Shown: piece after piece, positions 29,400-61,454 of the stretch
Layout: the number at the start of each line of letters is the position of its first letter
Position numbering within the stretch: position 1 is the stretch's first letter
DNA from: Bigelowiella natans CCMP2755
Taxonomy: Eukaryota; Protista; Cercozoa
Direction of reading: 5' to 3'
Assembly: GCA_000320545.1 (NCBI GenBank)
Contig: ADNK01002097.1
Location: forward strand, 1-61,454
Length of the DNA: 61,454 bases
Made by a program: the position numbers and the translations under genes
Notes under the pieces: generated by a model
Told to the model about the DNA's origin: nothing
What the model saw: the letters and a program-made list of their open reading frames with translations, nothing else
Databases searched by the model: none

Positions 29400-30137
29400 T
29401 CAGTCTCTACAGGACATGGGCGCACACCTTTGGCTTGTAGTTTGTTCAAAACCATTGCAGTAAATTGTTTGCACATGTATCAGCATCAAATTTTCACACA
29501 TGAATCTGCACACGCACTCATCCAATGTGCATGTGTCACACGTTACATGCGTGTTCTTCACGTGCGTGTTCTCAACGATAAAAGCAAGAGTGTGCCCCAC
29601 CATCCAAGTGCTTGGTGCACATGATCACATTGCGTTTGCAATTGTGTGAACCCGTCGTCTGCATTTGCATTGAGGCACCGTCAGTTAGCTGTGTCGTAGC
29701 ACGGTCCACAATCTTGCATGCATTTGCAACTGCTCACATGCTCTAGTGCTAGAGATCGATGCACTGAAGTGCACTTGGTCACCAGTGCTGGGCGCCGTTG
29801 TGTCGTGGACGCGTCAATTGTTGGCGCTTGGCTGCATGGCCACGATGTTCGAAAATGTGTGGGGGTGCATGCAGGAACCGTCGATTGCGAGTTGTCAATG
29901 CATGGTGAACACACACGTTGCATTCAGCATGAACAATGAACGAATCGAAGTGCACACAATGCACGCATGCATGCGGTGCGAGATCGAGGGGATCATCAGA
30001 AAGAAGGAAGACAGAAGGAAAGAAGTTGTTCGGAGCGGTTGCGTTGGAAGGATCATGGAGGGAAAATTCCAAGAAATCCAAAATCAATCTCCGGAAGACA
30101 TGCACGTGCACACACTTGGAATGTGAGAAAGGGAAAA
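29400..30137. repeat. TpA-depleted island (probable TE relic)
   Basis: No TA dinucleotide at 29752-30137 by manual count; CA/TG-rich; many overlapping Cys/His-rich spurious ORFs. Confidence 0.65.
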
Positions 30138-30339
30138 TATTTCGATTTTTGAACCCGATTAATTAATTTTAGTTAGGATTCTCGAATCGTGTTCTCTAAG
30201 CACAAAAAAGGATCAAATCCAATCTCTTGAGTAGGTACATGAGCTTCCTAAACGGCCTGCGTTTTCACTAAAAATAGACGAGTTTTGTTCAAAACTGCCA
30301 TGCGTTTTGTTTTGCTGGGTTTGATCAATCAAGAGCACA

Positions 30340-33300
30340 ATGAATGACATCACTGAAAGAAAGAACGAAGAAAGTGCACCACCATGCCCAAAGGCTGTTG
30401 AAAAACTTCTGAAGATGAACTGTGAAAGTGTTGTGAGGCATGTGCTCTATGGGGAAGCCATAGTTTTACCTAAGGTGGGCAACACTGTGGGTGCAGATCA
30501 GCACAAAATGATATATTCCCATTCGTATGGAATGGACATAATCCTTGAGGCTAATTACTTTTGTTATTAGGGATGGGAGCGTAGAGATTTCGATGATTTG
30601 CTTACAAATTGTGAATTACCGCAATGCTCTATTTCAAACGGCACCAACGCTAAGAACAATGCGAAAAATTCCATCCTTTCTAAATCTCAAGTCAAAAATC
30701 AGACATTTGCTTCTCAACCACGAAAGTATCCATGTTCAAGTACAAACCGGAAAAATCATAAAAGGTCGAAATTCTTCGATGCAGATGAGCTTTTTCGGAA
30801 CAAACATGGTCCTAATGATGATCGAGTTAATACCCGGTTTGGGGCATCATCATCATCACTGTCGGGCGAATGGAATAAAATAAAGGCCCGTCCATTTCAT
30901 GGTGATATTACAACTCCAAGATCAAAGCACCTGGACATGAATGCAAATTCGAAGAGAGACATCGCAAGACAGGTCTTTACAAAAGTATCCTTTTTAGACT
31001 CGAAACTAATTTGCCCTTAGTAATGTGTTCGAATGGATAAAATTTTACACCCTATCAAAATGAACGTCGATTAGTTATAAACTTCGGACTTGAATATAAA
31101 AAGTAAATTTTATTTGATACCATGTATTCATTTTTTCGTTCAGGCTACATGCCTTGCATCAGACTTACGCGCATGTGGTTCTGAACTGAAGTGGAATCAT
31201 ATTGGAAGATTACTGAAGTCACTGAATAATGAAGCCGCAACATTAAATGTTGCTCTGATATACCTTGATTCTTCAACTTCCTTCGTCTTGGATATCAAAA
31301 AGTAGAATTAAAGACTAATGATGCTTATTCCGAAATCGATTTATAATTTTATTGGTCAGGAAGTCAACGGTAGCAGATAGGAATGATGCTCCATTCTGTA
31401 TTGTAATATATTCTGGGACGCAGAACTCTACACGTTTACACCTCGATGATATGAATAGCAATATTTTTAAGATAACACTGTGGAATTCAGGAAAAGAGAC
31501 TCGAAAATTATGTAATCGACTTCTTGACTTAATATTGAACCATGATATGCGGGTATATGTATACGACGCAAAAAGGACTTTGAAAGTAATCCTTGATAAT
31601 GCACTCTCCGAAAGTGCGCTGCCATCGTCCTCGAAAACCCAGAATCTTCACGATCCATATGTCGCAGGTTGTCTTACATCTGTAAGGTAGTACCTAACAC
31701 GTCAAGATTACATGATTGTGTTCTCAGGTTGGCTTTTGGACCCTGATAGATGTATGTGAGCATTAATGTATGGAACCTTATCGCACTGATTGAACAATTT
31801 TTTCCTCCGCATAAGGCAAGTCAAAGCCCAACTTTGATGTACTGATGAAAGTAGGAAATTTAATCAGCCTCTCATTACAATCTTCAGTAGCGTTAATTTT
31901 CTAGGTGTACAAATTTAGCTCCACTCATTTGTTGGTCAGTCGAAGTTCATCAATTCCACTCCATATTCAAAAATTTCTTCGTCATTTATATCAACTGCCT
32001 GAATTTAGGTCACTATTGTTCTTCTTGGATATTCTGAATTCGACCTTGCACACACAAAATCTTGATTAGTATACCCTATGATAGTGAGTTTCTGGAAAGA
32101 AAGCTTAGGGCTGAGAACCAACATCATGCGTACCGATTCCAGGAAATGCCATTAATCCTGAGTCTTGTAGAGATGGAATCCCGAGGTACATCTTTTTTAT
32201 GCTTTTCATAGATAAAAGTTAAAATGAATATTTTTTAGGAATTGCTGTGAATACAGACGCGTTTCAGGAGGTGAAGCAAGATCTTATTGTGAGAATTCGC
32301 AACATTGAATATGAATCTCGGAAATTACTCCGAAAGGTTTTTCATTTAGTCCTATCCCGAGGACATAAGACATTAAGCTTTGGTTCGCATTGTATTAATG
32401 TTTCCCCCCCCCCCCAAGGATGTCTTACTAAGTTCTCCAGATCAAGTATCTAAAGTTCTCTTTGATGATCTCAAGCTTCCAAGAATTCAGGTTTGAGTAT
32501 GAAATAAGCTCGATGCTTGAAATGATTCCATCATTTTGCAGAAAACAGGAAGGCCAAATAAAACGTCAGTGTCTACTGGCGAGGTCTGTCACACATATAA
32601 TCTTAGGGTATCACGTGCTGATGTAATACTACTTTATAGGATGTTCTTTTAAAATTGAGCGTCTTTCATCAATTTCCGAAGCTGGTTCTCGAGCACAGAT
32701 CCCACACAAAACTGCTGAATACATGTAATCTTTTGCGCATCAACAATAATTCTGAAATGCATCTCTCCTTAATTCAATAGGTATAATTTCATTTTTTATT
32801 TTGCAAATTTTTATTTTGTGAAGACATTCTGCCTCTCATAGAAAAAACAGTGCATTCAAAGCATGGCAAACGGATACATTGCAGATGGAATAACTGTGCT
32901 ACTGGGACTGGTGAGCATGTAATACATCGCGAGAAATACATATCTACATACTTTCTGTCTGTATTTTCTAAACACTGTAGGTCGTATCAGTTCTAGCAAT
33001 CCTAATCTTCAAACCCTTCCAACTTCAAAGCATGCACTTAGAAACATCATTAATGTTCGAAATGCCTTCTGCACCTCGCATCGGGGAAGCTTATTAATCT
33101 CTGCAGATTATTCTCAAATGGAAATGAGAATCCTTGCCATGATTTCGGGTTAAGGAAGTTAAGGAAGCAATTTTGGCAGTATTATTGTTATTGAATATTA
33201 ATGTAACCGATTAGGTGATAACACTCTTCAAAATATATTTGATGGAAATGACGATGTATACAAGCTTATGGCTGCTATGGCATTCAGAAATGGTGATGCA

Positions 33301-34291
33301 AATGTTGTGACTCAAGATGATCGGGACAGAGCCAAAGTCCTTTGTTTAGCTGTATCCTATGGAATGGTGAGTTTAATGCCTTAAACTTGAATTTCAATTT
33401 TATTTTTATTTTTTCCATCAGGGATCCTATGCTCTTGCGCATCATCTTCGAACGACGTCGAGATCTGATGCCGAAGATCTTAAATCCGAGTTTCTAAGCA
33501 AGGTAAATTTGTTTTGAGGTGCATTCTGTGTTATAACCGATCGAACTATTCTTAGTTTCCCGGGATGGCTACCTTCATAAAGCGTAAGATAACAATTTTG
33601 ATAGCTCCTATGAAGCATTTAATCTTTTCCCACGCATCATGAAGGTGTGAAAACCCAAGCTAAAAATTGTGGCTATGTGACAACATACATCACAAAACGT
33701 CGGAGATATTTGCGAGGCATATCCAGCAACAACTATGGCAAACGCACTCATGCGGAAAGGCAGGCTGTGAATACAATTATTCAGGGAACAGGGAGTGACA
33801 TGATCAAAGGGGCAACAATTAGGATTCGGGAGGAATTACTCTGTCGCTACAAGCAGAACATTGCAGAAATTGTTTTGCAGCTGCATGGTGTTCAATTTAC
33901 TATGATGATTTCAATATCTCACCAAGCCGACCATGTGCGATAAATGTAATTTTGAGATTTTTTTTCAGATGAAATTGTCATTGAAATCAATGACACGTCT
34001 CAAATTGAGACGGTGTGCAAGATCGTTAAGGTTTGATTTTTCATTTTCATGAAGAGAAGTCATCGAAAACAAAAAAAGACGTGACAAGTGCACATTCGAT
34101 TTGCTCTTAGTCGTCATCCTTCTTGTCACAAATTTCTCACCACATGGTTTGCTGTGATTCAGGAAATCATGGAAAACGTGGTTCAAAAACAAACAAAAGT
34201 GAAATTTCCCATTCGGCTGAAGGCTGGGAAAGATTTAGGACATCTGGAGAGCATTGAAAGTTTTTCAGTGTCACCCAGAGGACAGTGCTAG
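30340..34291 (+). CDS. Family A DNA polymerase, Pol theta/nu-like, no helicase domain seen; about 19 short introns
   Basis: HDPYVAGWLLDPD (degenerate exonuclease region), TGRISSSNPNLQTLP, LISADYSQMEMRILA (motif A), RDRAKVLCLAVSYGMG (motif B), GYVTT..KRRRYL, AERQAVNTIIQGTGSDMIK, LQLHDEIVIE (motif C). Confidence 0.9.
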
Positions 34292-34386
34292 TCCAATGCT
34301 AGCACAGCTTTGTGTGCTGTGCGCTCACCCAGACCATGCATGCTGTGCAGTTTGACACCATGCGTGAGCTGCGAGACGTGCGACGC

Positions 34387-35240
34387 TGATGTCAAAAGAT
34401 TTCGAATTGCGCTTTGTTTTCTGTCAATTTGTTGCTCACACACGCGTGTGCACATTGGGTTCCGGCGCATTCGCGAAATTCCTCGAACCTTCTGGAAGGT
34501 TCTCGGAGACTCTCGAGTCTTCTCAGAAGTTTGGAGAACTTCAGCACACGCACGCGCCTTGCACGTCACACCAGTGTGACGCAGGCGGCCTTTGCACGAG
34601 CGACTGACCACGCAATCGGCCACGCACGTCACCTCCTCAGTTGCGAATCCAAGGCTTCAGCGTGAGCCTTTGACTCGGACAATCCACCAAGTGATTGGGG
34701 GGTCGGCACGTTCTTTCCGATTGGAGTCAACCCAGAACTTGCCGATTGCATCCTGCGCCATCTGAGGTTCGCATTGTTCGCAGCCAAACCAACTGGCGTT
34801 CCTCGTGCTTTCGAGGTCCCGGTGCCATTCGGAGAAAGGAGCCTCCGGCACCACGAGAATCGCAGTGCGAAAGCGCTTCTTTCGCAGCTTGTGAATCACG
34901 ACAGGAAGCTGGTCCAATCCAGGGCAACCGAGCCAGCGAGAAAAACGACCGTGCCCTTCCAGTCTTCCTCTGCTCGGCACTGATGATCCTCGTCCAACTT
35001 TTGGGGAACTTTCCCAATGCGAGGCCGAGCTTCAATGAGGACACTCGGACAGGATTGACCTCCGAGTGCCTCAAGGTGTTGTTGCCCAGGCTGAGCGGCT
35101 TGAGGTCGTCAATGTGTCTGTGGGACTGTCCGATCCACTGTTCCTAGCAATGAAACAGGACTCAGTGGAAGCCCGTGACAACACCTCGCAGGCTAGCAGG
35201 GCTGCGAGGGCCCAATCCAACTTGGGTCCTCTTTGCTGGC
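34387..35240 (-). mobile_element. 3' remnant of a Gypsy-like LTR retrotransposon: integrase GPY/F tail, Dam-like segment, PPT and 3' LTR; hypermutated
   Basis: Minus strand reads WIGP[17-nt insertion]CEVLSRASTESCFI...RHIDDLKP (GPY/F motif with Y->C), then DWKGTVVF...CPGLDQLPVVIHKLRK...AILVVPEAPFSEWHRDL, stop at 34657, purine tract GAGGAGG (34632-34638), and a putative ~245-bp LTR (34387-34631) with TG...CA ends. Confidence 0.6.
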
Positions 35241-35860
35241 ACAGCCCAAAGGGCTCTACCGCGCACCGCCTTCAGCACACGTGCACTTTGGAACACACGT
35301 GACACAGGTCAGCTGTGTGCTTTGGAAAGTGTGTGCTTTTGGTGCGTGTGTGCGTGCACGTGCAGCGTGCCATGCTGGCCGGATGCACAGCACGCACGTC
35401 CCAGCGCAGCCTAGCTCTAGCTAGCTAGCTAGCCAGGGTCCGCTGGGTGTGCTCGCAATCGCGCATGCAAATCATGCATGCTAGCGTGCCTTTTGCTGTC
35501 ATGCTTGTTGCGCACATTGCGATCGCTAGGATTCAAAATCAGAAGCTCACTGGAAGATGTGCAATGATATGTGGTGCAATGATCCCACAAAACCCAGAAA
35601 CCGTGCCCTGCATGCATTGTTCACTGGCATGCACGACACAGAGCATCATGCATGTGCGCTGTGTTTGCGTGCTTCGTCTCGCACACTGTGCATCCAGCTT
35701 GCTCTGGTCAGCATAAAAAATGACAGTGATCAAGGATTGATGTCTGTGTGGGAATCACGTTTCAGAGGAAGATGGATGGCTTTCAAATGGCAATGTAGCA
35801 TCAATGGAATGATTGAGCAACTTCAAGTCTAAATTGCCTCTGATCGCACATGCTAATGTG
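35241..35860. repeat. Continuation of the TpA-depleted island with (CTAG)n run
   Basis: Few TA, mostly inside CTAG (ctagctctagctagctagctagc, ~35411-35433); CA/TG-rich. Confidence 0.6.
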
Positions 35861-35868
35861 CATGACCG

Positions 35869-36698
35869 TTAAACCAACTGTCTTTGCTCCCTAGGATTAA
35901 TTACTACTCTTCCCGGCCAGAACTCAACTTCCTTTCTTTGAAGCTCATTCTCCTCGTCCTCAGCAACCATCTTGTTTATTGCATTCATGAAAGCTTCAGC
36001 AGATCCCTGCAAAAAAGAAGCAATTGGATACTTATATGAGTACTCGTATAACATGAGTCGACCACAGTCATACTTCCCCGCCTCCTCTGTCCCCTACAAT
36101 TACAACGAGTATCATGACCTGTATGATGTCAACATGTGCAGAAGATCCATGGTACGTTACTTCCTCCTCTTGAACAGCAAGGGCCTTCAATGTTTTAATG
36201 GAGATGATTGAAGATAAAGAAACCACATTTCAATATTCAGAACACTTACGTCTTCCAATATGCACATTCATTCATAAACACACTTTGAGAATACATAGTT
36301 ATTTATGGAAATATGGATGTACATGTACACAAGTGTATGAATGTAGAAACTTATCTTTTATTTTCTTGGGCACTACTAATGAGAGACGCATTGGCAGATT
36401 CATGAGCTGCAACAATTGATACTACCTCCTCATCCTCCCGTGGTGGAGCGCGGCGGCACACGCGAACACTTACCTGCGGCGAAGGTTAGTCAATCAATTG
36501 TCATTATTATATGAAGAATAATCCCACATATCGTCCAAACTGTATTTTCTAAATACTATAACACTCTGTTATTATTATTATTATTATAGTTATGCAACTC
36601 TAGGGTTTGGGGTTGTATAGGATTCATCAATGTGGACCATAACTTTCTTCTTTTCTTCCTTCAAATAAACACTTATACTCCGATGCAAGAAGACATAA

Positions 36699-60252: not shown

Positions 60253-61418
60253 GAGACGGAAGTAATGAAATGGATAAATATTTCCAATATGATCGTCCTA
60301 ATGTAGCTGTTCAAGGCAGCGGTTACAGCACTCATGTTGTGCCTGGATATATGTATATACATATATGTATATGTATATATACATATTTCAAACGGCCTAG
60401 TAACCGCTACGCTAGCTTCTTCTCCTCGTGCACATGCGCAACGCGAAGACCTACGCTACGCGCAGCAAAACTAAGCTTTCTGACGATGACGAAAACCCCA
60501 CAGAAGTGACAACAAAGGAAGGAAACGCATGTTCAATTTATGACTTCGATTCAAACCTTCAAGATGAAGACACCATTGACAAAGGTGAGGACAGGAAGGA
60601 CTTTGACTTCTCTCAATGCATCCGCAAAGCACTCGCAAATGCCACATCTGACATGAAGAACCAAAGTCGGGAAAAAAGAGTAAACGTGGAAAAATTCAAC
60701 AGAATTCTCTCCACTGTTTTGGAAAAAATTATGGATGACCAAAAAACAATCATCGCGGAAAACATCTTGCTGAAATCCAGACTGACCAAGGTTGAACAAG
60801 AGCTCACAACGCTCAAAAGGAACCAAAACCCCCGAGGTTTACGGCAACCAGGCACCCCATCCCCGCAACAAGACGAAAACTCCTACGCAACAATTGTTAG
60901 ATGCTGTAACGATGAAACGGTGAAGTCCAAGCAAGGACCCTCAACACCCCCAAGGCAGACAAGAAGGGAAACCTCACAAGGACAATGGCAGACCCCCAAG
61001 AAACAGATGAGAAAGAAAAAGAAATGCAACCAGAAATGCAAACAGAACGTGGCCATCTTGGAACTTGACGCGAACATGATGATCTCAGAGGGGTCCGCAG
61101 AACGCCAAGCTGCTACACCAAGCAACCAGCGCACCGAGGAAAAATTGGCAACATTAACCCCCGATGAAAAGGCAAAACAAACAACAAGAGATCATGGATC
61201 GCAATGATGAGACCACGCGTCTCACAACCGCAGAGCAAACAAGTCGAGAAGCTGTGCGCAAAGCGCGCCATGCTAGACCAAAACAGGATGCATTTTCATG
61301 CATGCGCCATGTGACCAAGGAAACAAACAGACACAATTTAAGCGCTGTAGCCGCTGCATTGCACAGCTACATTAGGATGACCATTGAAACAATTCAAACA
61401 TTTCATTACATCCGTCTC
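60253..61418. mobile_element. Non-autonomous TIR element (~1.17 kb, ~90-bp imperfect TIRs, GAGACGG termini) in an (AT)n context; MULE-like
   Basis: Left end gagacggaagtaatgaaatgg...tcctaatgtagctgttcaaggcagcggttacagc versus the reverse complement of the right end gagacggatgtaatgaaatgt...tcctaatgtagctgtgcaatgcagcggctacagc. Flanks are tatat and atacat. Confidence 0.8.
60428..61207 (+). pseudogene. LINE ORF1-like fragment inside the TIR element
   Basis: A-rich intronless ORF with coiled coil ENILLKSRLTKVEQELTTLK, SYATIV and WQTPKKQMRKKKK. This motif order is common in non-LTR ORF1 proteins. No transposase motifs seen. Confidence 0.4.
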
Positions 61419-61434
61419 ATACATGTACATACAT

Positions 61435-61454
61435 GAGACGGATGTGATGAAATA
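61435..61454 (+). mobile_element. Start of another copy of the GAGACGG TIR element (runs off the window)
   Basis: gagacggatgtgatgaaata, 16 nt after the previous element's right TIR. Confidence 0.75.

What the first reader, a model, noticed from the sequence alone, without database searches (positions are those of the whole stretch)
34302..35144. Complete loss of TpA in a retrotransposon relic: candidate 'reverse-RIP' A:T->G:C hypermutation system
Seen: a manual scan finds zero TA dinucleotides in ~840 bp, where roughly 40-50 would be expected from base composition, while CpG stays abundant and CA/TG are in excess. The residual protein shows the direction of change: the Gypsy GPY/F motif (consensus W.GPY.V......Y.I...H...LKP) reads WIGP-C-EVLSRASTES-C-FI...RHIDDLKP, and the downstream segment has W-H-RDL. 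Tyr codons TAY have become TGY or CAY, and the 107-aa ORF at 34657-34980 has no Tyr. Established: ascomycete RIP mutates C->T (mainly CpA) and creates TpA, and 5mC decay removes CpG; neither fits. Inference: a repeat-directed mutator edits TpA to TpG/CpA on both strands, either by adenine deamination (TadA-type enzymes favour TA) or through a mutagenic thymine modification. I cannot say whether it has been described in this lineage.
Basis: partly seen in the sequence, partly recalled or inferred. Interest (0 to 1): 0.92.

Follow-up and report, generated by a model that had tools for sequence, protein, structure and literature searches.

The report
TA-erased retrotransposon relic, known mutator
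A dead jumping-gene fragment in this alga has had every TA step rewritten to TG or CA by a TA-specific DNA hypermutation process; a 2026 preprint already showed this process by experiment in what the scan's notes say is the same species, so the locus is a clean extra example and not a new system.

Summary
Window 34302-35144 has 0 TA where 40 are expected, CpG is normal, and CA/TG are in excess by about the missing amount. The depleted tract is wider, 34237-35567, with 12 TA against 65 expected; 11 of the 12 are CTAG.

The DNA is the 3' end of a Ty3/gypsy-type LTR retrotransposon on the minus strand: about 170 aa of polyprotein C-terminus in three frames, then an LTR remnant.

The direction of change is shown in the closest family (three copies). 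Its two LTRs and its copies differ mainly by TG-versus-CA discordances and by TA versus TG/CA. Its open 1594-aa frame has 1 Tyr, against 74 in a TA-normal relative. At 32 of 69 aligned Tyr positions it has His or Cys, including the RT motif YVDD read as HVDD.

'Repeat-directed' is not. A family with at least 150 matches, 16 of which I examined and found 99.3-100% identical, is untouched, while this single-copy relic is saturated.

The process is already published for Bigelowiella natans (bioRxiv 10.64898/2026.01.13.699255). This scan met it before on other DNA (s1-417280).

Details I did not find in the preprint: LTR elements as targets, CTAG sparing, patchiness, no strand or half-site bias, and no creation of stop codons. 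The enzyme is still unknown.

The parts
34237..35567 (.). TA-depleted tract: 12 TA against 64.6 expected, CA+TG 240 against 164 expected, CpG 88 against 104.
34302..35144 (.).
35137..35187 (-). Relic polyprotein piece 1 (reads ...EVLSRASTESCFIARNS). It aligns to aa 1429-1445 of the family-Y polyprotein, the region after the integrase.
34994..35125 (-). Relic polyprotein piece 2 in a second frame (SHRHIDDLKP...). It aligns to aa 1448-1489.
34666..34935 (-). Relic polyprotein piece 3 in a third frame, lying inside the 107-aa ORF 34657-34980. It aligns to aa 1510-1592, the C-terminal end of the polyprotein, at 46% identity. It reads WLGCPG and EWHRDL where the TA-normal family has YLGYPG and HWYKVL.
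34290..34640 (-). Probable 3' LTR remnant; both limits are approximate. It follows the polyprotein stop, as the LTR does in family Y.
   Evidence: the limits are inferred by extrapolation
34441..34521 (-). Block 81% identical to the LTR of multi-copy family Z: an array of alternating GAA/TTC pentamers (heat-shock-element-like) plus an adjoining conserved block.
35189..35200 (.). CAGG-CTAG-CAGG: an 8-nt CTAG insertion footprint with a duplicated tetramer. It lies where the relic changes reading frame.
   Evidence: earlier notes s1-417313 and s1-417327 describe this scar type
35411..35434 (.). Tandem CTAG/GCTA array inside the TA-depleted tract.
33647..33943 (+). Nearest confirmed host exon, DNA polymerase family A (PF00476, E 2.5e-18), with normal TA content. 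It marks the left limit of the affected DNA.

Best explanation
The interval is the 3' end of a Ty3/gypsy-type LTR retrotransposon on the minus strand: the polyprotein C-terminus plus an LTR remnant. It is 5'-truncated and frameshifted, and it lies just past the 3' side of a host DNA-polymerase exon.

Its TA steps have been removed by the TpA-specific hypermutation process of this alga. That process acts on integrated DNA and turns the A:T pair of a TpA into G:C on one strand or the other, giving TG or CA at random. Tyr codons therefore become Cys or His, TAA and TAG stops disappear, and no new stop codon can arise.

Shown here, in the sister family: the dinucleotide specificity, both strands hit equally, action after integration, action in patches, and relative sparing of CTAG.

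Inferred: that this particular single-copy relic was mutated in place by the same process.

Inferred and unproven: that the chemistry is adenine deamination to inosine by an ADAT2/TadA-type enzyme, whose natural tRNA substrate is U33-A34 (a UpA step), and that targeting follows a silenced or foreign chromatin or RNA-guided state and not copy number.
For: (1) Composition of the core: 0 TA against 40.4 expected, CA and TG in excess by about the missing number, CpG normal.

(2) TE identity: tblastn of the family-Y polyprotein hits 35187-34666 on the minus strand in three frames. The block 34441-34521 matches an LTR at 81%. A TA-normal relative, family X, carries protease, RT, RNase H and integrase zinc-binding domains in that order.

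(3) Direction of change: family X has Y 74, C 16, H 37. The TA-free family-Y frame has Y 1, C 57, H 64. Of 69 aligned Tyr positions, 17 read His, 15 read Cys and 0 read Tyr. YVDD in X reads HVDD in Y.

(4) Action after integration: the 5' and 3' LTRs of one Y copy differ by 6 TG|CA double mismatches plus single mismatches, several of which read TA in one LTR and TG or CA in the other (the singles were read off the alignment and not tallied by class). Two Y copies (6036 nt, 93.4% identical) differ by 104 TG|CA doubles, 87 TA|TG-or-CA singles and 105 other bases. Three copies give 243 variable dinucleotide columns confined to TA/TG/CA. There are 125 other singleton changes, of which only 48 are A>G or T>C outside TpA.

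(5) Independent experiment: in mutation-accumulation lines of B. natans, 230 of 231 mutations in two viral inserts are A>G or T>C, all of these at TpA. TpA-poor CDS are enriched for RT and DDE Pfam families.

(6) Deaminase-fold genes exist in the genome.
Against: The relic has no close DNA paralogue. Its own ancestral TAs cannot be seen, so part of the TA-free state, especially in the LTR, could have been inherited from an already TA-poor master. Family Z shows that this happens.

The CA+TG enrichment is 1.34 in the core and 1.46 in the tract. Both are below the preprint's 1.52 cut-off, and the tract is shorter than its 3-kb cluster rule.

No enzyme is linked to the process. I found no 3'-neighbour preference on the mutated strand, which is not what a TadA-like single-strand preference for UAC would predict.

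The species name comes from earlier scan notes. I did not verify it independently.
Confidence: 0.85

Rival explanations
1. Inherited, not local. The relic, or at least its LTR and 3' part, was already TA-poor when it inserted, copied from a master element that had been hypermutated earlier or that carries TA-poor LTRs. The same mutator would be responsible, but it would not have acted at this locus.
For: Family Z has 28 LTR copies at 98.6-100% identity. Almost all carry the same 3 TAs against about 18 expected, with a TA-normal interior and a 1489-aa frame holding 73 Tyr. The relic's LTR block is 81% identical to that LTR. The relic and family Y share Cys in WLGCPG and His in W-H at two Tyr positions.
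Against: The relic's coding part is also TA-free and Tyr-free, which is not compatible with a working polyprotein. In family Y the copies demonstrably mutated independently after insertion. Two shared outcomes are within chance.
Confidence: 0.15
2. Same footprint, different chemistry. A thymine-modifying activity (oxidation to 5hmU or 5fU, or a J-like base) at TpA causes T-to-C changes, instead of adenine deamination causing A-to-G changes.
For: TA is palindromic, so T>C on one strand and A>G on the other look the same. The absence of any half-site or 3'-neighbour bias fits recognition of the duplex TA step at least as well as a single-strand deaminase. From general knowledge, not tested here: 5-formyluracil mispairs with G.
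Against: The six-frame search of this genome found no Tet_JBP (PF12851) match. That is weak evidence, because the positive controls did not ring either. Deaminase-fold genes are present, and the preprint names an ADAT2 homologue with the DNA-editing Asn.
Confidence: 0.2
3. RNA editing before reverse transcription. An ADAR-like enzyme edited the element's RNA, and the edits were fixed when the element was copied into DNA.
For: According to the preprint's discussion, ADARs favour a 5' U, and retroelements pass through RNA.
Against: RNA editing would give TA to TG on the sense strand only. The core has CA 70 and TG 69. The two LTRs of one integrated copy differ by TG|CA discordances, which can only arise after integration. 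The experiment shows in-place changes in integrated DNA. AA, CA and GA contexts are spared.
Confidence: 0.02
4. No mutator. The TA-free composition is a selected or intrinsic property of this DNA, for example avoidance of TA-targeting transposons, of UpA-cleaving RNases or of TATA-like elements.
For: An apparently active family keeps TA-poor LTRs. The GAA/TTC arrays in the LTR are TA-free by construction.
Against: Loss of every Tyr codon, HVDD in place of YVDD, and random TG/CA outcomes between copies are mutational decay and not selection. The relic is frameshifted and truncated.
Confidence: 0.03

Closest known systems
TpA-specific hypermutation of integrated viral DNA in Bigelowiella natans (Mettrop et al., bioRxiv 2026, 10.64898/2026.01.13.699255)
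   Same: Same species according to the scan's notes. Same dinucleotide, same products (TpG and CpA), both strands, foreign DNA as target, and a long-term footprint of TpA depletion with CpA+TpG gain. The preprint already notes RT and DDE Pfam families among TpA-poor CDS.
   Different: The preprint shows de novo events only in one NCLDV insert and one virophage insert. Its genome scan needs at least 3 consecutive 1-kb windows, so a 1.33-kb tract like this one is below its threshold. A text search of it finds no mention of LTR elements, Tyr loss, CTAG or flanking context.
Repeat-induced point mutation (RIP) of ascomycete fungi
   Same: Both are DNA-level, transition-only, dinucleotide-specific hypermutation that inactivates mobile DNA and leaves a dinucleotide-skew footprint.
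   Different: The direction is opposite: RIP changes C to T, mainly at CpA, and so creates TpA. RIP needs duplicated sequence and a sexual cycle. Here highly repeated young elements are untouched and single-copy DNA is hit (preprint). RIP creates stop codons; this process cannot.
APOBEC3 (C to U on cDNA) and ADAR (A to I on RNA) editing footprints in retroelements and viruses
   Same: Both are deaminase-type, context-dependent hypermutation used against retroelements and viruses.
   Different: Those act on single-stranded cDNA or on RNA and leave strand-asymmetric footprints. This one is strand-symmetric, acts on integrated DNA, and is restricted to TpA.
ADAT2/ADAT3 and TadA tRNA adenosine deaminases, including reported DNA editing by amphioxus and trypanosome ADAT2
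   Same: Their natural substrate is A34 preceded by U33, a UpA step, and homologues are present in this genome (preprint).
   Different: Nothing links any of these genes to the footprint. The loci I inspected look like ordinary housekeeping deaminases without extra domains in the frames examined. No 3'-neighbour preference was seen.

Membership tests
B. natans TpA-to-TpG/CpA hypermutation footprint (Mettrop et al. 2026) | Strong TpA depletion (Rho_TpA <= 0.43) | tested here: met
   Rho_TpA is 0 in the core and 0.19 in 34237-35567.
B. natans TpA-to-TpG/CpA hypermutation footprint (Mettrop et al. 2026) | CpA+TpG enrichment (Rho >= 1.52) over at least 3 consecutive 1-kb windows | tested here: not met
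   Combined CA+TG obs/exp is 1.34 in the core and 1.46 in the tract, and the tract is only 1.33 kb. The enrichment is in the right direction but below the preprint's strict cluster rule. My ratio may not be computed exactly as theirs, because the formula is an image in the text I hold.
B. natans TpA-to-TpG/CpA hypermutation footprint (Mettrop et al. 2026) | Changes are A>G or T>C at TpA only, on both strands, in integrated DNA | tested here: met
   Met in the sister family Y: 243 TA/TG/CA-confined columns against 48 non-TpA A>G or T>C changes, LTR-to-LTR discordances, and TG 53: CA 51. For the relic itself this is inferred from composition and from Tyr becoming Cys/His.
B. natans TpA-to-TpG/CpA hypermutation footprint (Mettrop et al. 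2026) | Target is foreign or mobile DNA | tested here: met
   The interval holds an LTR-retrotransposon polyprotein C-terminus and an LTR block.
B. natans TpA-to-TpG/CpA hypermutation footprint (Mettrop et al. 2026) | Elevated de novo mutation rate at the locus in mutation-accumulation lines | not testable with these tools
In addition, the core has no TA left to mutate.
Fungal RIP | C-to-T transitions that create TpA and deplete CpA/TpG | tested here: not met
   The opposite skew is seen: TA 0, CA and TG in excess.
Fungal RIP | Dependence on sequence duplication | tested here: not met
   The relic is single-copy at DNA level. Family X gave at least 150 matches, and the 16 copies examined (99.3-100% identical) have TA obs/exp of 1.13-1.19.
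Ty3/gypsy-type LTR retrotransposon (identity of the relic) | Polyprotein with PR-RT-RNase H-integrase order, flanked by LTRs | tested here: inconclusive
   The order and the LTRs are shown for relatives X and Y. The relic keeps only the last 170 aa or so (29-46% identical to X and Y) plus an LTR-like block. Its family assignment therefore rests on homology of the tail.
ADAR-type RNA-editing footprint | Sense-strand A-to-G bias | tested here: not met
   CA 70 against TG 69 in the core. Post-integration LTR discordances are present.

The most novel reading that the evidence does not exclude
The TpA mutator may recognise the duplex TA step and not one strand. Which strand mutates is a coin toss whatever the outer neighbour, yet the tetramer context sets the rate, with CTAG most refractory. 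It would work in patches whose borders can fall inside an element. It would have converted old LTR-retrotransposon layers and many short intergenic tracts that lie below published detection thresholds. Currently amplifying families would escape it, one of them carrying LTRs almost free of TA, which would point to an arms race in which elements shed the target dinucleotide. Because the process never makes stop codons, it would also leave long false ORFs, and possibly raw material for new genes.
Probability: 0.3. Interest if true: 0.6.

Novelty: already known. Interest (0 to 1): 0.4.

Why it matters
A regulated, dinucleotide-specific A:T-to-G:C mutator aimed at foreign DNA is a rare kind of genome defence, and its enzyme could be a natural DNA adenine editor. 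That discovery belongs to the 2026 preprint.

This locus adds the following:
- Retrotransposon relics in short intergenic tracts are targets. There are three such tracts in this 61-kb window, so the footprint is probably more widespread than the preprint's 124 clusters of at least 3 kb.
- Pairs of LTRs give a built-in before/after test showing that the mutator acts after integration.
- CTAG survives the process.
- Young high-copy elements are spared, which argues against a RIP-like repeat sensor.
- The process preserves open frames, so unannotated 'genes' in TpA-poor DNA should be treated with suspicion.

Tried and rejected
I have no read-level evidence on expression, polymorphism or de novo changes, and read laying was not used.
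- Right-hand neighbour: the minus-strand ORF at 35872-36054 gave no homologue and no Pfam match. I therefore could not show that the tract lies between converging genes, as earlier notes describe for similar DNA.
- ORFs inside TA-poor tracts gave no Pfam family. They are best read as artefacts of stop-codon loss.
- The family-Z polyprotein has no protein match in the window.
- Tet_JBP (PF12851) was not found, but the control genomes did not ring either, so this says little.
- Deaminase-fold loci are present: six MafB19/TadA-type matches and one A_deamin locus. In the frames examined they look like ordinary guanine, dCMP or tRNA deaminases with no added domains. None can be tied to the footprint.
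- Strand processivity was rejected: the TG/CA outcomes along 6 kb pass a runs test (z = -0.39).
- I did not build a copy-versus-consensus spectrum. All spectra come from pairwise or three-way site counts.

Full report
**1. The observation**

The interval 34302-35144 (843 bp, 56% GC) holds no TA dinucleotide, where base composition predicts 40.4. None of 20,000 shuffles fell below 24, and the Poisson probability is about 3e-18. CpG is normal: 64 observed, 66 expected. CA is 70 against 50 expected and TG is 69 against 54, so the excess roughly matches the missing TAs. The gap from the TA at 34300 to the TA at 35145 is the longest TA-free run in the window. The next longest is 388 bp, at 29750-30138.

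In 34237-35567 there are 12 TAs against 64.6 expected. Eleven of them lie in CTAG, although only 3.5% of TAs elsewhere in the window do. Two more tracts of the same kind lie at about 29480-30138 and 60500-61450.

**2. What the DNA is**

A six-frame search of the same genome with the 107-aa ORF finds three closer relatives at 46-49% identity, one of them inside an open 1594-aa frame. It also finds at least 150 matches of a more distant family, many of them inside an open 1659-aa frame.

I distinguish three families:
- **X:** 5.7 kb, 326-bp LTRs that are 100% identical in the copy examined, protease, RT, RNase H and integrase-zinc domains in that order, normal TA content.
- **Y:** 6.07 kb, 515-bp LTRs, three copies, almost TA-free.
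- **Z:** 7.1 kb, 358-bp LTRs, about 20 or more copies.

tblastn places aa 1429-1592 of the Y polyprotein, its very C-terminus, on window 35187-34666 on the minus strand, in three frames. Downstream on that strand, 34521-34441 is 81% identical to a block of the Z LTR. That block is an array of alternating GAA/TTC pentamers plus a conserved neighbour.

The interval is therefore the 3' end of a Ty3/gypsy-type LTR element, 5'-truncated near 35240 and frameshifted. To its left is a DNA polymerase family A exon at 33647-33943 on the plus strand, with normal TA. I could not establish the identity or orientation of the right-hand neighbour.

**3. Direction of change**

The relic has no close DNA paralogue, so I tested direction in family Y.

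- **Amino-acid content.** The X polyprotein has Tyr 74, Cys 16, His 37. The Y frame has Tyr 1, Cys 57, His 64.
- **Aligned Tyr positions.** At 69 aligned Tyr positions of X, Y reads His 17 times, Cys 15 times and Tyr never. Phe and Trp are mostly conserved.
- **RT motif.** It is YVDD in X and HVDD in Y.
- **The relic.** It reads WLGCPG and EWHRDL where X reads YLGYPG and HWYKVL. Its 151 aligned residues hold no Tyr, against 11 in the last 175 aa of X.

**4. The process acts on integrated DNA, at TpA only, on either strand**

The two LTRs of an element are identical at insertion. In the C1189 copy of Y they are 94.8% identical. They differ by 6 adjacent double mismatches of the type TG versus CA, plus single mismatches. 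On reading the alignment, several of those singles show one LTR keeping TA where the other has TG or CA.

Two full copies (6036 aligned nt, 93.4% identical) differ by 104 TG|CA doubles, 87 singles of TA against TG or CA, and only 105 other bases.

In the three-copy alignment, 243 variable dinucleotide columns are confined to the set TA/TG/CA. In 153 of them all three copies are mutated, with discordant outcomes. Only 125 other singleton substitutions occur. Of these, 48 are A>G or T>C outside TpA, and about a third of those look like mis-polarised CpG decay.

TG and CA outcomes are equal (53:51) and show no runs along the element (z = -0.39). This excludes an RNA-editing origin and argues against long strand-processive events.

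**5. Further properties**

These are drawn from small samples.
- **Context.** Among inferred ancestral TA sites, CTAG is retained most often: 16 of 26, against 79 of 334 for all other contexts (Fisher p = 9e-5). Sites with an A or T neighbour are lost fastest.
- **No half-site bias.** Which of the two A:T pairs mutates does not depend on its outer neighbour; every half-site contest is near 1:1.
- **Patchiness.** The C2141 copy keeps 59 of 73 TAs in alignment columns 600-2100 but almost none elsewhere.
- **No stop codons.** By enumerating codon contexts, TA to TG or CA cannot create a stop codon in any frame, and it removes TAG and often TAA. This explains the open 1594-aa frame of a dead element and the 27 ORFs of 50 aa or more overlapping 33500-36500. 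It also warns that unannotated ORFs in TpA-poor DNA may be artefacts.

**6. CTAG**

Earlier notes of this scan describe 8-nt CTAG insertion scars with a duplicated tetramer (s1-417313, s1-417327). One such scar, CAGG-CTAG-CAGG at 35189-35200, sits exactly where the relic changes frame. A tandem CTAG array lies at 35411-35434.

Other CTAGs, for example at 35144-35147, are in frame with the homologous protein and show no duplication. Those look like surviving original TAs. Both sources seem to contribute, since CTAG occurs 11 times against 3.8 expected from the window's frequency.

**7. Targeting**

The 16 family-X copies I examined are 99.3-100% identical and have TA obs/exp of 1.13-1.19. Yet 9 of 16 have an 800-bp flank with TA obs/exp of 0.4 or less, against 4.6% of window bins (p = 8e-9). 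Young elements therefore sit in or beside old hypermutated DNA without being mutated themselves.

The relic is single-copy and saturated. This is the reverse of what a repeat sensor would give.

Family Z is a curiosity. Its interior is TA-normal, with a 1489-aa frame holding 73 Tyr. Its LTR carries only 3 TAs against about 18 expected, all within its last 20 nt, and the roughly 440 bp before the 3' LTR carry only 2 TAs. The LTR count holds across 28 LTR copies that are 98.6-100% identical, with minor exceptions.

**8. What is known**

A full-text search found one paper on this: Mettrop et al., bioRxiv 2026, 10.64898/2026.01.13.699255.
- In mutation-accumulation lines of Bigelowiella natans, 231 of 302 nuclear point mutations fall in an NCLDV insert and a virophage insert.
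- In the NCLDV insert 210 of 211 mutations are A>G or T>C, in the virophage insert all 20 are, and all of these fall on TpA. The rate is about 1000 times the background, and it appears in only some lines.
- The authors also report 124 TpA-poor, CpA+TpG-rich clusters of 3 kb or more, RT and DDE Pfam enrichment among TpA-poor CDS, and an ADAT2 homologue as candidate enzyme.
- A text search of the preprint finds no mention of LTR elements, Tyr loss, CTAG or flanking context.

The species name for this genome comes from earlier scan notes, one of which (s1-417280) led me to the preprint. I did not verify the species independently.

**9. Mechanism and enzymes**

Adenine deamination is the most economical chemistry: inosine pairs with C, and the tRNA substrate of ADAT2/TadA is a UpA step. 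It is not shown. Thymine modification would leave the same footprint. The genome has deaminase-fold loci that look like ordinary housekeeping genes in the frames I examined. It gave no Tet_JBP match, but that search was uninformative.

**10. Verdict**

'Repeat-directed' is not supported. The system is already described in what the scan's notes say is the same species. The locus is a clear, sub-threshold example in a retrotransposon relic, with some incremental detail.

**Not done:** no read-level evidence and no genome-wide census.

Noticed in passing
window 29480-30138 and 60500-61450: Two more TA-depleted tracts of the same type. The first has 6 TA against 42 expected, with CA 74 and TG 74 against about 40 expected each. 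The second has 18 TA against 59 expected. Neither matches the three polyproteins or any Pfam family. Short tracts like these fall below the preprint's 3-kb cluster rule.
   Followed up: partly
L031+L035 (G000:C2862:292714-299813, minus strand) and L003-L030: Family Z LTR element (7.1 kb). Its interior has normal TA and a 1489-aa frame with 73 Tyr. The 358-bp LTR has only 3 TAs, all within its last 20 nt, and the roughly 440 bp before the 3' LTR hold only 2 TAs. The LTR count holds across 28 LTR copies at 98.6-100% identity, with minor exceptions. Possible explanations are a hypermutated 3' end passed on by a master copy, or loss of the target dinucleotide.
   Followed up: partly
window 34441-34521; Z LTR positions about 100-240: The LTRs carry arrays of alternating GAA/TTC pentamers that resemble heat-shock elements, which hints at stress-inducible transcription of these elements.
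   Followed up: no
L043-L058 (16 copies of family X); L063:7001-8300: Very young family-X elements (LTRs 100% identical in the copy examined, TA obs/exp 1.13-1.19) sit next to TA-depleted DNA far more often than chance: 9 of 16 flanks at or below 0.4, against 4.6% of window bins. The borders can be sharp: in L063 the element is followed by a tract that is almost entirely TA-free (one TA in about 1.3 kb).
   Followed up: partly
L062 (G000:C2141:26370-32406): One family-Y copy is hypermutated only in part. It keeps 59 of 73 inferred TA sites in alignment columns 600-2100 but almost none elsewhere, so the process works in patches whose borders fall inside an element.
   Followed up: partly
G000:C3010:7624-11634 and 32326-34416: The third family-Y copy is split by about 20.7 kb of inserted DNA. 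I did not examine the insert.
   Followed up: no
window 35189-35200 and 35411-35434: A CTAG insertion footprint with a duplicated tetramer (CAGG-CTAG-CAGG) sits at a frameshift of the relic, and a tandem CTAG array lies nearby. This is the same scar type that earlier notes report in other spacers of this genome.
   Followed up: partly
window 34088-34291 (+) and 34108-34236: A plus-strand ORF running up to the TAG at 34289-34291 ends in a motif that, from memory, resembles the C-terminus of family A polymerases. If it is the last exon, the host gene ends at the edge of the LTR remnant. The 128-bp TA-free stretch inside it could be spill-over of the mutator, but gaps of this size occur elsewhere in the window, and Pfam did not confirm the exon.
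   Followed up: partly
window 33500-36500: The list for this 3-kb stretch holds 27 ORFs of 50 aa or more, on both strands. Many overlap one another inside the TA-poor tract, as expected when TAA and TAG stops are erased and none can be created. Gene predictions in such DNA are unreliable.
   Followed up: yes
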